From Amphiscolops sp. MND2022 (Eukaryota), in the NCBI GenBank assembly GCA_964187785.1, contig OZ076412.1:25606001-25670000 (forward strand): a DNA stretch of 64,000 nucleotides, read 5' to 3'. The first letter of the stretch is position 1. Each line of letters opens with the position of its first letter. Below the pieces are notes generated by a model. It did not search any database and had not been told where the DNA came from. It saw only the letters and a program-made list of their open reading frames with translations. Positions 33,576-40,989 of the stretch are shown piece after piece. A program made the position numbers and the translations under genes.

Positions 33576-35714
33576 TTATGATCTACAAAAAGTACTTAGG
33601 CGTTTCAGGTAGAAACTGCATGAGTGATCAATGTTGAAACAATTTGCAGTTTTATCAGCAAGGAACCGATTTATACAAGACTTGAAAATATCAAGAGGCA
33701 TATCAAAAGACACAATTTTCAAATTTATCAGTTCATTTGCTGAACGCGCCGCTCTAATATAGAAATTGTCATTTGTGGAAAATTTGTTGCATTTTGGAAT
33801 GTAGAACAGGCCATTCGATGACGAGCGTGTGCATAGGTTGGATCTCATGATATTGTTGTCTAGGTCCACAGAATTGTTACACAACTTCCATAACAGAATA
33901 ACGTCGTTTTTCACAATTTGGTAGCATATTGGAAGGATGTCAAGATGTATCAGTGCTGAAACAAGAGAAGAAGTTTTATTGATCCAACGTATTACTTTGT
34001 ATTGAAAATTTTCAAGTTGACGAAGCTGGGTTCTAGTTGGACACCATACAGGTGAGCCATACAGTGAAATAGAAAGAATAAGGGATGAATACAAAAACTT
34101 TTTCCTTTTAGAAGATGTAGAAAATGGAATGTTTCTCTTTAGAAAAAAGAATACTCTTTTTGATATTAGGAGCTTAGAATCAACATGTCGTTTCCATGAT
34201 AAGTGGTTAGAGATAATGAAACCAAGGTCATCCATTTCTTCGACAAAGGGAAGAGGATTGCAACCAAACATCAATTGGTCGGATTTGTTTTTGCGACTAA
34301 AATCGATAACTTTACACTTTTTAGGGTGAAAGTCAAGATTGTTCAATTCGCTCCATTCAGAAAGACTATTAATGTCGGCTTGAACTGATTGTGCATTGAA
34401 GTTATTGAAGACCTTAAGATCATCGGCAAAGAGTCGGAATTGGCTGTCTTGTATGCCATCACCAATATCATTTATTAAACATAAAAATAGTAACGGACCC
34501 AACACACTGCCCTGGGGCACACCTGATGTAACAGGTAGGGCCGACGAAATAGATTGATTTATGCGCACACTCTGGAAGCGCCCAAATAGATAAGAGTTGA
34601 ATAATTCTAGAAAATTGCGGTCGAAATAAAATTTTTCAAGTTTTGACAACAACAAATGGTGAGAAACAGAATCAAAGGCCTTTGTGACATGAAAATAAAC
34701 AGCAACGGCATAAGAATCACAATCACAAGAAGCATAAACACTGTCCAGGTAGCTGATTATTTGAGAAACAGTGCTTCTAGATTTCATGAAACCATGTTGT
34801 TCACGTTTAATCATTCGACTAATTCTAGGGTAAATAAAATTAAACAATAATCTCTCAAGGACAAGCGACAGCTTAGGCAGAATACTAATTGGTCTGTAGT
34901 TGGTAATGTCCGAATGATTTCCAAGCTTATGTAGAGGAGTGACAAGTGAAGTTTTCCATTGAGATAGCCAGGTACGGTTCCGTATAATCCAATTAAATAA
35001 ATCAAAAGCAAGAGGGGCGAGGATATCAGAACAGCTACTTAGAACAAATGATGGAATATTGTCAGCACCACATGCACTGGAATCAGGGCATTTTCTCAAC
35101 AGATCTTCAACATCGGAAACAGACAGTTGGAAGTCATCTAGTTTAATCGAGGGGTTATCAAAGGTCTCATGAAACTGATGATCTTCTTTCTCAATGAATA
35201 CAGACGCAAAATAAGAATTGAACTCTGAAGATTTTTCATGATCGCTATTCAGAGCTTTGGTTTTGTGAAACATTACTGAGGGAAGTGTCTTGCCAAATCC
35301 AAGGTTGCGTAACAACTTGAAACACAGCCTAGAAGATGAAAGATCAAACTGATTTACGAACAATTGTTTGTCTAGTTCGATAGAATCAGAAATAGCTGTT
35401 GTAATTTCTTTGAGTTTGGTAGCTTGCAGGAAAGAACTGCACTTTGACAATTTGCGAAGAGTTGTGTCTCTGGTATTTAGAAGATGAATAGTGTGAGAAG
35501 AATAGTATAACGGCAGTGATAGTCGTTTAGCACGTTTAGTTGCAATGGAGCTGTTTAGCGATGAAGATAGAATCAAATACCACTCTTCGGGATATTGACT
35601 GTTTGGGAAATTGTCGAAACTGATCAGATTGAATAAAGGTTGTAAACAACCATTGAATGAAATCACATTGAAGGATGATCTGGAAAAAACATTCTTGTAG
35701 GAGTTTGAAGACAC
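33576..35714 (-). CDS. LINE ORF2 RT and C-terminus (712-aa open portion)
   Basis: NYRPISIL, EQHGF, AFDSVSH, GVPQGSVLGP, FADD. Confidence 0.9.
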   Translation of the reverse strand: MSSNSYKNVFSRSSFNVISFNGCLQPLFNLISFDNFPNSQYPEEWYLILSSSLNSSIATKRAKRLSLPLYYSSHTIHLLNTRDTTLRKLSKCSSFLQATKLKEITTAISDSIELDKQLFVNQFDLSSSRLCFKLLRNLGFGKTLPSVMFHKTKALNSDHEKSSEFNSYFASVFIEKEDHQFHETFDNPSIKLDDFQLSVSDVEDLLRKCPDSSACGADNIPSFVLSSCSDILAPLAFDLFNWIIRNRTWLSQWKTSLVTPLHKLGNHSDITNYRPISILPKLSLVLERLLFNFIYPRISRMIKREQHGFMKSRSTVSQIISYLDSVYASCDCDSYAVAVYFHVTKAFDSVSHHLLLSKLEKFYFDRNFLELFNSYLFGRFQSVRINQSISSALPVTSGVPQGSVLGPLLFLCLINDIGDGIQDSQFRLFADDLKVFNNFNAQSVQADINSLSEWSELNNLDFHPKKCKVIDFSRKNKSDQLMFGCNPLPFVEEMDDLGFIISNHLSWKRHVDSKLLISKRVFFFLKRNIPFSTSSKRKKFLYSSLILSISLYGSPVWCPTRTQLRQLENFQYKVIRWINKTSSLVSALIHLDILPICYQIVKNDVILLWKLCNNSVDLDNNIMRSNLCTRSSSNGLFYIPKCNKFSTNDNFYIRAARSANELINLKIVSFDMPLDIFKSCINRFLADKTANCFNIDHSCSFYLKRLSTFCRS

Positions 35715-36240
35715 AGAGGAAGCGAAATCAAAGTATATAGGTTAGTGATCAGAAAATAGAACAAGGCTAATTGACAGGGCTAAACATTGACTATCACAGA
35801 ACACAAGGTCAAGATTGTTTTGATTTTTATGTGTAGGCTCATGAACCATCTGAACTAGGTCTTTTTCAAGAATAAAGTCAAGGAAATAACGTTCCATTGA
35901 AGAAGTAGAAGAATAGGATTTCCAGTCGACATTTGGGAAGTTGAAATCACCAAGAATGTAGACATTATGGGTACCAGTGTAGCCGAATTGCAGCAAAATA
36001 TCAACAAATTTTTTGTAATAGGCTTCCATACATCGGACTAATTCTGAAATAACCACAGAATATTTAGAAGAGTAGTAGGGAGGATTGTATACCAATATAA
36101 AGAACGAGGGAACATCACTGAGAATTACACAAGCAATGGCGAAACCGAATTCCTCAATAGTAATATCAATATACAGTAAGGGAGAATCATTGACGATTAC
36201 AAGTAGAAACAGCTTTAGTTGTCAATGTTAAACTGTCACA

Positions 36241-36288
36241 ATATGTTTACAAACGTTTTCGACTATGAAAAGTCATCATCAGGCATAA
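36241..36288 (-). ncRNA. Minimal type I hammerhead ribozyme-like motif
   Basis: CUGAUGA-U-GACU[UUUCAU]AGUC-GAAA followed by palindromic AACGUU. Confidence 0.7.
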
Positions 36289-36395
36289 TAATCTGAAAAT
36301 ATAAACAACATGAAAGCACCAAACTAAATGGAGATTTATAAATTTGATAGAACGTAAAAAATGCAATGCGTAGACGTTATAAATCAATTGAACTG

Positions 36396-38898
36396 CTAGA
36401 ACTTCAACGTCAACTGCCTTCTGCGATACTCGTCGCGCTGGTTGAGGGCTGGACGGAACTTCTGAATATATAGCGCTTCAAGAGTCAATAATTTGGAGTC
36501 GGAACGGGCAAAATCAAGAATCTGAGGTTCAGGAAAAGCGGTATTTGGAGAACATTGTGATAAATGTTGGGTTACTGGTGCAGACGATCTCTGATGCTCG
36601 TACATTCTTGTCGATAGATGACGGACAGTTTGTCCGACATAGCTGGCATTACAGCCAGGACAAATTAACTGATACACGACAGAACTACGAAGCATTTTTG
36701 AGAAACTCGACTTCAATGAAGGCAATAACGACTTCAGCTTCCTGGTGGTGAACACTACCTTCACAGGAACAAATGATTCAAGCTTCCGTTTGAAATCATC
36801 AGAGATGCGACCACGATATTGAGTTGAAAACCACAACTTACGTTCTTCGGTTGTATTTTTGGGGCTGTTCGTAACCTCGAGTACAATTTTATCCACCGTG
36901 TCTTTCAAAATGGGGTTGTAAAAACCTTTCGGGTACTGGTTAGCCGTCCAAATCGCTTTGGATGCCTCTATACCTTCATGAAAGTTGTTCCAATTCGATG
37001 TTGCGTTGAAAACACGATGTACATGTCCACTAATGATATTTCTCTTATACCTCATAGGGGCAAGTGCACGAAACGAGAGGGTTGTTCCAGTGTCTGTAGG
37101 TTTTCTATACCACCTTGTTGAAAGTCTGTTACCACTCTGCGACACCACCATATCCAGAAAAGGTATTTCATGATTGAGCGATCTTTCTATCGTGAACTTG
37201 AGGTTCACATGCATTTGGTTGAAATAACCTAGTAAACTGTCAACTTCCGTACTTCGAACTGTTCGGATAATGTCGTCTACATAACGTGCGAAGAGTTTGC
37301 ACCCACTTTTATGATTGAGACAGATGTTGCAACACCATGGATCTTCCTCAGAAAGTGCCCTAAACTCATTCAACGATAAACTGGAGCATTTGCGGTGAAA
37401 CCAGAGGTCACAACTGTCACATTGGATGGAATAACCTCTATAAGTAACTGTTTTATTGCAGATACCACACAAGCAATTAGCATGTTTCGCCATAGTACCC
37501 TGGTCACATTTTAGTCTATTTTCAAAATTTTTCAACCATAAGTTAGCAAGAATAACAGAAAGTGATGCCCCCATGGCCACACCATCTTTCTGGACGAACC
37601 ATTTCCCATCCACCATGAACTTCACGTTTTCACGGCTAATTTCATTAGCTCGTGGAAGGTGTTCTGAGGCATTTTAGGTCTGTGTTCAGATGCATACAGC
37701 TTAGCAAGAGCAAAATCGATAGCTTCGTCAATAGGGACATTCGTATAGAGGCTTTTCACATCAAATGACACAATTTTCTCGTCATCAGATAATACGACAG
37801 TCTCAAGTAGGTGTTTTACTTTCATTGTAGATGTTTCTATGCTGGCGCCAGGTAAATTAACAAAGAAATCCGAGATAAACTGGTTGATGTTAGCGTAACA
37901 AGACCCCGGAAGGGACAATACTGGCCTTAAGGGTATACCATCTTTATGCACTTTTGCTAATCCATACAGACGAGCCGGTTGACTACCAGAACTACGTAAC
38001 TTGTTGTAAACACTCGAACCTAACTGGCCGTGTTTCTTGAGGTATTCCAGTTTCTTGTTAAAGGCGTCCTCCGTTCTCTGTAAAAGATGTTTTTTGCCAC
38101 TTATATCAGTTACCTCCGAAAACTGCTCACCGGTTGTTACATCATTGAGTTTATCAGAATACTGTTGTTTTGTCATTATACAAAAACCGCAACCTTTGTC
38201 AAAAGGAACAGCCATCAGGTCATATTCTTTAAGGAATTTGCAAGTTTTCAAATACGATCTATCCGGTCGTTGGGTGCTAGCTTTCCGAATGTATGACACC
38301 GATAACGCATTGAGGTTGTTAATTGTGCCACTAGTATTTTGAGGGCTATGTTTCACCTGACACATCAATCTGTCCATATCAGCGAGAAAGGACATTTCGT
38401 TGAATTTGTCCAAAACAGGGTGTTTCGGACCACGCGATAGGACATCAAGCACGTAGTTGGGCGGTTTCACATCTGCTAAGACAACTACGTTATCAGATCG
38501 CTCAGCCAACGGCTTGTCCTGATCAACAGCCAGTTTTTTCAATTTTGCACGGTGTTTGTTTCTCAGCAACTTAAAGTTTAGTTTCAAACTTTGTCGTATA
38601 TAGAACGATACAGATACCAAAAGCTTATCCGAAAAAGCAGACGATACTCCTTGTCGGGCACAGCTAAGTTTTTCTTCGGTCTGGTTTCGGGCCAGACGTG
38701 CCTTTGCCAACTCGCTTCTCAGCAATTTTTCTGGAAATCATGAACAATCGTAGGCTCAAAACACCCATTTTCAGGTACGCGGAACTTCAGGAACTTAGGG
38801 ATGATGTCATTTTTTAGACACTCCGATAGAAAGTTAATCCGTGCAACATTGTTAGAGTATTTCGCTACAGCACTTTTGTACCGCGAGAATAAATCCAT
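36396..38898 (-). CDS. PLE RT - GIY-YIG protein with PHD insertion (two 1-nt frameshifts in A-runs)
   Basis: FDVKSLYTNVP, QKDGVAMG, YVDD, IPFLD, WYRKPT, VVYQLICPGCNASYVGQT. PHD at 37320-37469. Confidence 0.9.
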
Positions 38899-38998
38899 TT
38901 CTGTTTTGTACGAATAAGTTTTTCGAATATACAGTAAGGGAGAATCATTGACGATTACAAGTAGAAACAGCTTTAGTTGTCAATGTTAAACTGTCACA

Positions 38999-39046
38999 AT
39001 ATGTTTACAAACGTTTTCGACTATGAAAAGTCATCATCAGGCATAA
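38999..39046 (-). ncRNA. Minimal type I hammerhead ribozyme-like motif (second copy)
   Basis: Identical motif in the pseudo-LTR. Confidence 0.7.
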
Positions 39047-40989
39047 TAATCTGAAAATATAAACAACATGAAAGCACCAAACTAAATGGAGATTTATAAA
39101 TTTGATAGAACGTAAAAAATGCAATGCGTAGACGTTATAAATCAATTGAACTGCTAGAACTTCAACGTCAACTGCCTTCTGCGATACTCGTCGCGCTGGT
39201 TGAGGGCTGGACGGAACTTCTGAATATATAGCGCTTCAAGAGTCAATAATTTGGAGTCGGAACGGGCAAAATCAAGAATCTGAGGTTCAGGAAAAGCGGT
39301 ATTTGGAGAACATTGTGATAAATGTTGGGTTACTGGTGCAGACGATCTCTGATGCTCGTACATTCTTGTCGATAGATGACGGACAGTTTGTCCGACATAG
39401 CTGGCATTACAGCCAGGACAAATTAACTGATACACGACAGAACTACGAAGCATTTTTGAGAAACTCGACTTCAATGAAGGCAATAACGACTTCAGCTTCC
39501 TGGTGGTGAACACTACCTTCACAGGAACAAATGATTCAAGCTTCCGTTTGAAATCATCAGAGATGCGACCACGATATTGAGTAATATCAATACCGTTGAT
39601 TACAATTGAGTAATATCAATTCAGTAATATCAATTGCACGAATTGGAATGTTGGACGAATGGGCAAATAGTAAGCCACCATGTTCACCGCGACTTCTATC
39701 AGTGCGCGCAATAGTACGATAAGAGGAACCAATGAAAACTTCTGAGTCAGTAATTTCATCATGAAGCCATGTTTCCGTAAGAAAAACCAAAGCAACAGAT
39801 TTAGAATTGCACAGATGGACTGAAGTCATACGCTTTTCCATTGGACATATTGATTGACAATTCACCAGCATATTTTAGGAGCACAGCCTCAAGGACAAAA
39901 GCTTCACTCACCTTGTAAACTCCACGCCTTACAATTGAACATGTCGTGATTTTGTCAATTCGATCTACGTAATTCCCATATTTCCGTGCCAAAAGTTGTT
40001 TTAGTCCTATTTCAAGTAGTCCTATTTCCATTAGTTCTAAGGCGGCACTAAAAAATAATTAGTTCTATTTCCATTAGTCCTATTTCAGTTTTGATCATTA
40101 GTCCTATTTCATTAGTCCGAATTCCTGTCTCCCTTAGAAAGTAAGTTGAGTAAATTCAAAAAGTTCCTTGATGACGATACTCGGACAGAATACAACAAGC
40201 ACGAAATAGATGAATTCATAGAACAAAGTTGGATAAAGAGATGGAAGAACATCCAAAACAAAGGCCTCTTGCAACATCTCCCTAACACGCAACCACAGTT
40301 AAACACCTGTTGTCCGTTAACTATTGGAGACTCTTATGTTGTCAATAAAATCTGCGAATTAGTAATTGGGAATTCCTTTGCTTTTGCCGAATATGCCTGG
40401 AACATGTGGAAGTGTGAATCACCAATGTGCATATGTGGAAAGTAAGAAGACAATCCCTATCACTATTTCTTCTGCTGTCCGCACTATAACGAGATACGCC
40501 CAGATATACAGAGCCTAAATTTAATGGAAGCGAATGATTGTCAAAAACTCCGAGATTTCATAATTAATACAAATAAACTGAACTTATAGACTTTATAGAC
40601 TATTGACCTATCATTAACATCCTCCCGCAAATAGGGGTTTTTGTAGAAATTATATATATATATATATTTTTTTTTGGGTGCATCTTATTCTAGTTATGTT
40701 ATGATGAACATAATTCAAGTCTTCTCTGTCTGTCTTTCTGTTTGTCTGAAATCTCTCTGAGTGCTTACCCAATCGTTTAGTTTACCTGGACTTCACTGAA
40801 ACTGTTCAATAAGCCCGAATCGTATAGCGATTATTTGTTATGTAAAACAATTCTTCGCGGTTGATGTTTCATGTTGAACAGGAATCCATTCTTAGGAAGC
40901 TTGAGGATTGGTTACCCGAGGAATTGGAGGAATGTAGGCGAAAATCTTTCCTGCACTTGGAGACTTGGCTGTGAATGTTAGAAACAACT

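What the first reader, a model, noticed from the sequence alone, without database searches (positions are those of the whole stretch)
37320..37469. PHD finger inserted inside the reverse transcriptase of a Penelope-like element
Seen: a complete Cys4-His-Cys3 pattern (CGIC..CDSC..WFHRKC..WCCNIC) sits in frame between QKDGVAMG and the catalytic YVDD. Established: PLE proteins are RT plus GIY-YIG, these two motifs are normally close, and PHD fingers read histone H3 tails. Inference: a chromatin reader fused into the RT palm could steer integration. I know of no description of this placement.
Basis: partly seen in the sequence, partly recalled or inferred. Interest (0 to 1): 0.8.

Follow-up and report, generated by a model that had tools for sequence, protein, structure and literature searches.

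The report
PHD finger inside Penelope-like RT
A young copy of a Penelope-like jumping gene whose reverse transcriptase has a conserved PHD zinc finger (a module that usually reads histone tails) built into a loop beside the catalytic site. The feature is real and marks a whole clade of these elements, but PHD fingers were already known at other positions in algal relatives.

Summary
On the minus strand lies a Penelope-like element (PLE): a 2,758-bp unit plus a 657-bp 5'-truncated upstream copy, flanked by a 10-bp target duplication and nested in a LINE. A Pfam-significant PHD finger (window 37320-37469) sits in frame between RT4(B) QKDGVAMG and RT5(C) YVDD. That spacing is 95 aa here and 28-41 aa in 198 other PLE RTs examined.

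The insert is not private to this copy. At least 10 diverged families in this genome carry it, as do relatives from at least five other sequence sources. On an RT tree built without the insert columns they form one clade (UFBoot 100). Zinc ligands, V502 and W517 are (nearly) invariant while synonymous sites are saturated. AlphaFold2 gives a folded PHD on flexible linkers; its nearest solved structures are Pygopus, BPTF and MLL H3K4me-reading PHDs.

That the finger reads histone H3 or steers integration is inferred, not shown; the one docking test gave no answer. PHD insertions in PLE RTs are published for algal Chlamys elements at other sites, so this is a new variant of a known kind. The window copy carries three 1-bp deletions that break the frame. 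First readers of this scan noted the same feature at eight other places in this genome.

The parts
36168..38925 (-). Full PLE unit (2,758 bp): RT with PHD insert, GIY-YIG EN and the 3' non-coding part
   Evidence: The direct repeat offset of 2,758 bp defines the unit. It is 99.46% identical to an intact copy, L002.
38926..39582 (-). Upstream 5'-truncated copy (657 bp, 100% identical to 36168-36824). This is the pseudo-LTR arrangement typical of PLEs. The element's ATG (38948-38946) lies in it.
36161..36170 (.). Target-site duplication TAATATCAAT, left copy (boundary ambiguous by 1-3 bp because of microhomology)
39582..39591 (.). Target-site duplication TAATATCAAT, right copy
38722..38898 (-). 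N-terminal ORF piece (59 aa), separated from the rest by single-base deletions near 38894 and 38730
37625..38725 (-). ORF piece 2 (367 aa): N-terminal PLE motifs (GPKHP 38431-38417, DKG 38200-38192) and RT fingers/palm up to RT3
   Evidence: the consensus of 90 PLE proteins shows the DKG and LYGLxKVHK blocks
36396..37625 (-). ORF piece 3 (409 aa plus stop): RT4, PHD, RT5-7, thumb, GIY-YIG EN
37569..37592 (-). RT motif 4(B), QKDGVAMG
   Evidence: Q454, G457, M460 and G461 are invariant or nearly invariant in 90 PLEs
37305..37505 (-). The insert relative to insert-free PLEs (about 67 aa, residues 483-549 of the 851-aa ORF): linker, PHD, linker
37320..37469 (-). PHD finger core, C4HC3 (C495 C498 C511 C514 H519 C522 C541 C544 in the intact ORF)
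   Evidence: Pfam PF00628 E 3.4e-7. The ligands are (nearly) invariant in the clade. The AF2 model superposes on Pygo PHD at 0.8-1.2 A.
37272..37283 (-). RT motif 5(C), catalytic YVDD
   Evidence: D559 and D560 are invariant
36450..36680 (-). GIY-YIG endonuclease core with the internal CCHH motif (VVYQLICPGC...YVGQT...EH...H)
   Evidence: Pfam PF01541 E 3.6e-4, 21.2 bits, just under the cut-off of 22.6. Y760, C764, Y771, G773, R782, H786, H796 and E825 are nearly invariant in 90 PLEs.

Best explanation
SHOWN. [quoted passage not shown] It is now frame-broken. Its RT carries a PHD zinc finger of about 65 aa in the loop between the helix after motif B and the beta-hairpin of motif C. The finger was acquired once, at the base of a PLE clade. 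It has since been kept under purifying selection through deep diversification, in many families of this genome and in relatives from marine and other metagenome assemblies. It folds as an independent PHD module on two variable-length, low-confidence linkers.

INFERRED (most likely mechanism). The finger acts as a tethered chromatin-docking module. It binds the N-terminal tail of histone H3, probably in a K4-methylation-sensitive way as in Pygopus, BPTF and MLL PHDs. That would hold the RT-EN-RNA particle on nucleosomal DNA while the GIY-YIG nuclease nicks and target-primed reverse transcription starts, biasing where or how efficiently copies integrate. The module may have come from the pool of PHD fingers carried by other retrotransposons: a LINE ORF1 in the same genome has a 41%-identical PHD.
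For: PLE identity: the DKG and GPKHP blocks, LYGLAKVHK, QKDGVAMG, YVDD and GIY-YIG with CCHH are present. The full-length AF2 model has pLDDT 93.1 and pTM 0.87, and its best PDB matches are telomerase RTs. The copy has the pseudo-LTR arrangement and a TSD.

The insert is real: Pfam PHD E 3.4e-7, and a gap of 95 aa against 28-41 aa in 198 relatives.

It is not copy-specific: at least 10 diverged families in this genome carry it, several with intact 850-905-aa frames. Relatives come from two Tara Oceans samples, ERZ25878734, ERZ25071359, ERZ17092181 and JGI Ga0126343. Those tested from the first three sources are at most 59% identical to anything in this genome.

Single origin: a careful ML tree with the insert columns removed puts all 24 insert-bearing rows in one clade. 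Support is UFBoot 100 / SH-aLRT 99, with one change in 100% of bootstrap trees (quick tree).

Constraint: C498, V502, C511, C514, W517, C522 and C541 are invariant. C495, H519 and W539 are at least 90% conserved in 20 proteins that are 37-58% identical to the window family's intact ORF. Synonymous sites are saturated (pS 0.70-1.0). The PHD core's pN of 0.22-0.40 equals that of the thumb and EN.

Fold: in the full-length model the PHD has pLDDT 81-92 and its linkers 63 and 68. The PHD-only model superposes on Pygo PHDs at 0.8-1.2 A over 55 residues (33% identity). The next matches are BPTF, Alfin, MLL1-PHD3 and TAF3, all solved with H3K4me peptides.

Pocket: in human Pygo1, mutating V350, A356 or W366 abolishes or strongly reduces H3K4me binding, and I357 contacts T3 (PMC2726290). 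Their aligned equivalents here are V502 (invariant), residue 508 (always small: S, G, A or T), W517 (invariant) and I509 (mostly hydrophobic: I, V, F or A).

Precedent: PHD fingers occur in Chlamys PLEs, CR1 LINEs and Rehavkus transposons (PMC8557442). A LINE ORF1 in this genome has a 41%-identical PHD.
Against: There is no direct evidence of histone binding. The docking test of PHD with H3(2-40) gave no answer.

The Pygo residue E360, which contacts H3 A1, aligns with a variable position (D, E, K, H, A or others). A BPTF-style four-aromatic cage is not conserved.

Many clade members end the finger with CxC (CGC), and one family with CxxH, instead of CxxC. This is unusual for histone-reading PHDs.

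Pygo PHD needs a cofactor (BCL9 HD1) for good H3 binding, so likeness to Pygo could equally point to a protein partner.

Insert-free PLEs with intact ORFs live in the same genome, so the finger is not needed for PLE activity in this host.

I could not inspect model coordinates, so the position of the finger relative to the nucleic-acid cleft is inferred from RT topology only. No insertion-site or chromatin data were available.
Confidence: 0.5

Rival explanations
1. The PHD is functional but does not read histones. It binds another partner instead. That could be a host or element protein (as the rear face of Pygo PHD binds BCL9 HD1), a second RT-EN protomer (PLE hammerheads and insertions suggest dimeric or tandem behaviour), or nucleic acid such as the template RNA or target DNA.
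For: The closest solved relative, Pygo PHD, is a dual binder that depends on a cofactor. The A1-contacting position is variable, and the last ligand pair varies between CxC, CxxC and CxxH. The finger is embedded in an enzyme that handles RNA and DNA. The H3 docking test gave no support, which is not evidence either way.
Against: The residues that stay invariant besides the zinc ligands (V502, W517) are the ones that form the K4me pocket in Pygo, rather than its HD1 face. All the top structural neighbours are H3-tail readers.
Confidence: 0.3
2. The finger is a structural or regulatory add-on of the polymerase itself, for example a zinc-stabilised brace of the palm that alters processivity or folding. 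It would have no targeting role, or be a nearly neutral passenger that is hard to lose.
For: The loop between motif B and motif C tolerates other inserts: a different 218-aa insert in P0196 and 46-aa loops in another PLE group. Insert-free PLEs thrive in the same genome.
Against: A passenger should decay, yet pN in the PHD core is as low as in the thumb and EN while pS is saturated. No member of the 24-row clade has lost it. The long, variable, low-pLDDT linkers fit a tethered module better than a brace.
Confidence: 0.12
3. The insert is an artefact or is not part of the mature protein: an intron that is spliced out, an assembly chimera, or a chance Cys/His pattern.
For: No RNA data exist to show the mature transcript.
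Against: The insert is in frame, with domain-level conservation, in dozens of copies and in independent assemblies and metagenomes. PLE copies are made from RNA, so a spliced-out segment would be missing from copies, yet all of them retain it. Pfam and PDB E-values are about 1e-7.
Confidence: 0.02

Closest known systems
Chlamys PLEs of Chlamydomonas with PHD-finger insertions (Craig, Yushenova, Rodriguez & Arkhipova 2021, PMC8557442)
   Same: Both are Penelope-like retroelements with a PHD finger inserted inside the enzymatic polyprotein, in some cases inside the RT. It is presumed to be a chromatin-related accessory module.
   Different: In Chlamys the insert lies between RT2a and RT3(A) or inside the EN, not between RT4(B) and RT5(C). 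Chlamys elements have an N-terminal EN without CCHH and live in green algae. Five families were reported there. Here it is a monophyletic, diversified clade of C-terminal-EN elements in an animal-type genome and in marine metagenomes. The two are therefore independent acquisitions.
Canonical C-terminal EN+ PLEs of the Penelope/Poseidon type
   Same: The shared features are the DKG-containing N-terminal region, a TERT-like RT, a GIY-YIG EN with the internal CCHH, no CX2-5CxxC linker, a unit of about 2.7-3 kb, pseudo-LTR or tandem copies, and a TSD.
   Different: This clade carries the 60-90-aa PHD insert. No hammerhead ribozyme was detected by Rfam in this copy or in seven related loci. I had no Repbase reference sequences, so placement within named clades was not tested phylogenetically.
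Pygopus PHD finger (PDB 2vpe, 2dx8, 4up0, 3zpv)
   Same: It is the best sequence match (E 2e-7, about 33% identity) and the best structural match (0.8-1.2 A over 55 residues). The two share the C-x2-C-x12-C spacing, the conserved V and the WFHR-C Trp that wall the K4me pocket. Precomputed Pfam hits label the insert PHD_Pygo (PF27108).
   Different: Pygo is a free-standing nuclear cofactor whose PHD needs BCL9 HD1. Pygo has CEASC where the element has CxxC. The A1-contacting Glu is not conserved. Many clade members end with CxC.
PHD-bearing ORF1 proteins of CR1-like non-LTR retrotransposons (Kapitonov & Jurka 2003, as cited in PMC8557442)
   Same: A retrotransposon protein carries a PHD of the same subtype. 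A LINE in this genome has an ORF1 with PHD, coiled coil and CCHC knuckles, whose PHD is 41% identical (pairwise E 6e-12) to the PLE finger.
   Different: There the PHD is an N-terminal domain of a separate RNA-binding ORF1 protein, not an insertion within the polymerase fold.
Chromodomain of chromovirus (Ty3/Gypsy) integrases (recalled from general knowledge, not checked here)
   Same: A histone-mark reader is fused to the integration machinery of a retroelement and biases target choice. This is the functional analogy for the proposed mechanism.

Membership tests
Penelope-like elements (EN+) | RT of the PLE/TERT lineage with the PLE-specific N-terminal conserved blocks, including the DKG motif | tested here: met
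   FDKGCGFCIM lies at window 38200-38192 and the GPKHP block at 38431-38417. A 90-sequence PLE alignment shows D251 and K252 nearly invariant. The AF2 model's best PDB matches are TERTs.
Penelope-like elements (EN+) | GIY-YIG endonuclease fused to the RT | tested here: met
   The C-terminal sequence is VVYQLICPGC..YVGQT..R..EH. Pfam PF01541 gives E 3.6e-4 and 21.2 bits, just under the cut-off of 22.6. The catalytic Y, G, R, H and E positions are nearly invariant in the alignment.
Penelope-like elements (EN+) | Pseudo-LTR or partial tandem organisation with a target-site duplication | tested here: met
   A 657-bp 5'-truncated copy sits directly upstream of the full unit, with the 10-bp TSD TAATATCAAT. 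Tandem arrays with 2,743-bp spacing lie on contig C1820.
Penelope-like elements (EN+) | Hammerhead ribozyme motif in the pseudo-LTR (canonical PLEs) | tested here: not met
   Rfam cmscan found no hit up to E 10 in 36150-36400, nor up to E 1 in 35500-40500 or in eight related loci. A CUGAUGA...GAAA string at about 36282-36255 (-) does not fold convincingly. Naiad and Chlamys PLEs also lack canonical HHRs, so this does not exclude PLE membership.
Penelope/Poseidon-type EN organisation | CCHH motif inside the GIY-YIG core and no CX2-5CxxC linker upstream (criteria from PMC8557442) | tested here: met
   The CCHH pattern is C-PG-C ... H ... H (C764, H786, H796). The 50 residues upstream of GIY contain no Cys. 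Phylogenetic placement against named reference families was not possible because I had no Repbase sequences.
Hydra clade of PLEs | CCHH absent, DKT instead of DKG, CxCX5C linker | tested here: not met
   CCHH is present, DKG (or DKS) is present, and there is no Cys linker. It is not a Hydra element.
Naiad/Chlamys PLEs | N-terminal GIY-YIG EN, CxC motif, IFD in the RT | tested here: not met
   The EN is C-terminal. It is therefore not a member of the clade in which PHD inserts were previously described.
PHD finger (PF00628) | C4HC3 ligand pattern with cross-braced spacing and the conserved Trp before Cys7 | tested here: met
   Pfam gives 30.6 bits against a cut-off of 24. C495, C498, C511, C514, H519, C522, C541, C544 and W539 are conserved. 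The fold matches PHDs at about 1 A. Zinc binding itself is not testable here.
H3K4me-reading PHD fingers (Pygo/BPTF/MLL type) | K4me pocket residues, including the Trp two residues before the ligand His, and A1/T3-contacting residues | tested here: inconclusive
   W517 and V502 are invariant, residue 508 is always small, and 509 is mostly hydrophobic. These match Pygo1 W366, V350, A356 and I357. The E360 equivalent is variable, and there is no full aromatic cage.
H3K4me-reading PHD fingers (Pygo/BPTF/MLL type) | Measured binding to H3 tail peptides | not testable with these tools
   The predicted complex with H3(2-40) gave no verdict. Peptide binding assays are needed.

The most novel reading that the evidence does not exclude
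A whole clade of animal Penelope-like retrotransposons built an H3K4-methyl-reading PHD finger into the palm loop of its reverse transcriptase. The finger may have been captured from the ORF1 of a co-resident LINE. The clade would use it to dock the TPRT machinery on nucleosomes carrying a particular mark. Target choice in these elements would then be set by chromatin state rather than by DNA sequence alone. That would be the first histone-mark reader placed inside a polymerase fold with a demonstrated targeting role.
Probability: 0.3. Interest if true: 0.7.

Novelty: new variant of a known kind. Interest (0 to 1): 0.5.

Why it matters
How PLEs choose their insertion sites is poorly understood. 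A conserved reader domain hard-wired into the RT gives a concrete handle that can be tested by mutation. The same genome also holds intact insert-free sister PLEs, which provide a natural control for comparing insertion landscapes. The case also shows that the loop between motifs B and C of an RT can host a whole folded domain for a long evolutionary time. That is useful knowledge for engineering RT fusions. Finally, it adds an independent, animal-side example to the algal Chlamys cases, suggesting that PHD capture by retroelements is recurrent.

Tried and rejected
1. Complex prediction of the PHD (alignment A3) with this genome's own histone H3 residues 2-40: no verdict (score 0.02). This is not evidence either way.

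2. Hammerhead ribozyme: Rfam searches of the element, its non-coding part and eight related loci found nothing. A CUGAUGA...GAAA string did not fold convincingly.

3. Expression and splicing: no RNA runs hold the sequence, so I did not use read laying.

4. Formal dN/dS: synonymous sites are saturated between families, so only pN against pS could be compared. Within-family copies are about 99% identical and uninformative.

5. ESM Atlas feature search: it returned only generic PLE clusters, none carrying a PHD.

6. No supplementary files of PMC8557442 are held as text.

7. Literature searches for PLE with PHD or plant homeodomain return only the Chlamydomonas work. A search on RT4/RT5 was noise.

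9. I considered and rejected membership of the Hydra clade and of Naiad/Chlamys (see the membership test).

Full report
**1. What is in the window**

The finding lies on the minus strand, inside a Penelope-like element (PLE). Three adjoining minus-strand ORFs (38898-38722, 38725-37625, 37625-36399) together encode one PLE protein. Compared with an intact genomic copy (L002, 851-aa ORF), the window copy is 99.46% identical. It carries three single-base deletions, near 38894, 38730 and 37630, which split the frame. It also has an 18-bp insertion in the 3' non-coding part.

A 657-bp stretch (36168-36824) is repeated without a mismatch at 38926-39582. So a 5'-truncated copy sits directly upstream of a full 2,758-bp unit. 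This is the pseudo-LTR arrangement typical of PLEs. The element's ATG (38948-38946) lies in the upstream partial copy.

The whole insertion is flanked by a 10-bp duplication, TAATATCAAT (36161-36170 and 39582-39591). It interrupts a LINE whose endonuclease fragments lie on either side and whose RT lies at 33576-35714.

**2.

- RT4(B) QKDGVAMG is at 37592-37569 and RT5(C) YVDD at 37283-37272.
- Between them lie 95 residues containing CGIC...CDSC...WFHRKC...WCCNIC.
- Pfam's PHD model matches exactly window 37320-37469, with E 3.4e-7 and 30.6 bits against a cut-off of 24. The intact copy gives the same match.
Among 256 related proteins with both motifs, 198 have a gap of 28-41 aa and 57 have 90-120 aa rich in Cys. 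One (P0196) has an unrelated 218-aa insert.
- In an exhaustive phmmer scan of 1.84 billion representatives, most PLE hits align as two stretches that skip residues 483-549.

**3. It is a clade character, not an accident of one copy**

Within this genome:
- About 20-25 copies of the window's own family were found. This is a lower bound, and many lie in a tandem array on contig C1820. All retain the finger.
- At least nine further families, only 39-55% identical in protein, carry an insert of 92-116 aa with the same ligand pattern. Several have open frames of 850-905 aa.
- The genome also holds intact PLEs without the insert: ORFs of 817-818 aa with a 28-aa gap.

Outside this genome, insert-bearing relatives come from:
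- two Tara Oceans marine metagenome samples;
- three other ENA assemblies (ERZ25878734, with at least four families; ERZ25071359; ERZ17092181);
- one JGI metagenome contig.

The four of these that I checked are at most 49-59% identical to anything in this genome, so they come from other organisms.

I built a maximum-likelihood tree of the RT core with the insert columns removed. All 24 insert-bearing rows form one clade (UFBoot 100 / SH-aLRT 99). Every bootstrap tree needs only one change of state (a quick tree of 89 rows gave SH-aLRT 97). The sister clade and all deeper PLE lineages lack the insert, so the simplest reading is one gain followed by retention.

**4. Constraint**

I aligned 20 clade members that are 37-58% identical to the window family's intact ORF.
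- Invariant: C498, V502, C511, C514, W517, C522 and C541.
- At least 90% conserved: C495, H519 and W539.
- Freely variable in length and sequence: the two linkers.

Between families, synonymous sites are saturated (pS 0.70-1.0). The PHD core has pN 0.22-0.40, the same as the thumb and EN regions. A formal dN/dS could not be computed, but this pattern is that of a selected domain.

The last ligand pair varies. It is CxxC in the window's subclade, CxC (CGC) in many others, and CxxH in one family.

**5. Structure**

AlphaFold2 on a 90-sequence alignment gave a confident full-length model (pLDDT 93.1, pTM 0.87).
- The motif-B helix spans 463-481.
- The finger (about 491-540) has pLDDT 81-92.
- The flanking linkers have pLDDT 63 and 68.
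- The motif-C hairpin spans 554-566.

The best PDB matches of the whole model are telomerase RTs, then group II intron RTs, as expected for a PLE.

The finger modelled alone (pLDDT 80.5) superposes on Pygopus PHD fingers at 0.8-1.2 A over about 55 residues (33% identity). The next matches are BPTF, Alfin-like, MLL1 PHD3 and TAF3, all solved with H3K4me peptides. A sequence search of the PDB agrees (Pygo2 PHD E 2e-7). Precomputed Pfam labels on the database relatives name PHD_Pygo (PF27108).

**6. Mechanism**

What is shown is a folded, conserved PHD module tethered by flexible linkers to a palm loop of an otherwise standard PLE RT.

What I infer is that it docks the RT-EN particle on chromatin through the histone H3 tail. 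The basis is as follows:
- In human Pygo1, W366E abolishes H3K4me binding and V350E and A356E reduce it strongly. I357 contacts T3 and E360 contacts A1 (PMC2726290).
- By the HMMER alignment, these correspond to W517 (invariant), V502 (invariant), residue 508 (always S, G, A or T), I509 (mostly hydrophobic) and D512 (variable).

So the K4me-pocket wall is kept, but the A1 contact is not obviously kept. Pygo itself needs a cofactor, which leaves room for a non-histone partner.

A predicted complex with this genome's H3(2-40) gave no verdict. No RNA or chromatin data were available. I put the histone-tethering model at about 0.5, another ligand at about 0.3, a purely structural or near-neutral role at about 0.1, and an artefact or intron at about 0.02.

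The intron idea is also contradicted by the biology. PLE copies are made from RNA, and all of them keep the insert.

**7. Comparison with what is known**

By its EN organisation (internal CCHH, no Cys-rich linker) the element resembles Penelope/Poseidon-type PLEs. It is not a Hydra element and not a Naiad or Chlamys element, by the criteria in PMC8557442.

No hammerhead ribozyme was detected by Rfam in this or related copies. That is a departure from canonical PLEs, which I could not resolve.

PHD fingers inside PLE proteins are already published. Five Chlamys families of Chlamydomonas carry them between RT2a and RT3(A) or inside the EN. PHDs are also known in CR1 LINEs and Rehavkus transposons (PMC8557442).

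My literature searches found no description of a PHD between RT4(B) and RT5(C), nor of a PHD-bearing clade of C-terminal-EN PLEs from animal-type genomes. Subscription journals and Repbase notes are not covered.

The verdict is therefore a new variant of a known kind, by independent acquisition at a new site, and of moderate interest.

**8. A lead on origin**

A search of the genome with the finger alone also hit repeated 450-aa ORFs. These carry an N-terminal PHD, a coiled coil and CCHC knuckles. They sit directly upstream of a 1,096-aa ORF2 with an APE endonuclease and an RT. In other words, they are LINE ORF1 proteins. Their PHD is 41% identical to the PLE finger (pairwise E 6e-12), closer than Pygo. 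Capture from another retrotransposon is therefore plausible, but I did not test it.

**9. Earlier notes of this scan**

Eight first-reader notes describe the same feature at other places in this genome. This agrees with the multi-copy, multi-family picture above. I did not check those particular places.

Noticed in passing
G000:C4:27720649-27725203 (L104:2355-3704:- and L107:4150-7437:-); at least 8 similar 454-aa open frames elsewhere in the genome: A LINE whose ORF1 (450 aa) has an N-terminal PHD, a coiled coil and three CCHC knuckles. It is followed by an ORF2 with an APE endonuclease and an RT. Its PHD is 41% identical to the PLE finger, so it is a possible donor or sibling of the insert.
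   Followed up: partly
G000:C1:26600542-26606921 (L111:3545-9922:-) and contig C533 (L023): A PLE copy of the window's family in which a 52-73-aa segment just after the PHD/RT5 region is repeated in frame many times. This gives a 2,126-aa open frame. Its Pfam hits are spurious repeat matches.
   Followed up: partly
G000 contig C1820 (about 39 kb): A head-to-tail array of at least 14 units of the window's PLE family at 2,743-bp spacing. Several units have the intact 851-aa ORF. There are also inverted and tandem clusters at C3:18.94 Mb and on C202.
   Followed up: partly
window 33576-36095 and 39587-39871 (-): The host of the PLE insertion is a non-LTR retrotransposon: a 712-aa RT ORF plus APE endonuclease fragments split by the PLE.
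   Followed up: no
alignments A2 and A3: The last zinc-ligand pair of the inserted finger differs between subclades: CxxC, CxC (CGC) or CxxH. One member (P0002) has Gln in place of the ligand His. The functional meaning is unknown.
   Followed up: no
window 36255-36282 (-): A CUGAUGA...GAAA string followed by a quasi-palindrome (GUUUGUAAAC) recalls the dimeric hammerheads of PLEs. Rfam does not score it, and it does not fold above shuffled controls.
   Followed up: partly
P0196; L085 and L093-L095 (JGI metagenome contigs): The same loop between motifs B and C carries other length variants in other PLE lineages: a Cys-poor 218-aa insert in P0196 and a 46-aa loop in a separate group. The loop seems to be a tolerated insertion site.
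   Followed up: no
G000 contigs C67, C33, C82 and C4:21.12 Mb (L060): Large tandem arrays of a histone gene repeat of about 3.63 kb (H2B, H3 and H2A seen in L060). They fill many unplaced contigs.
   Followed up: no
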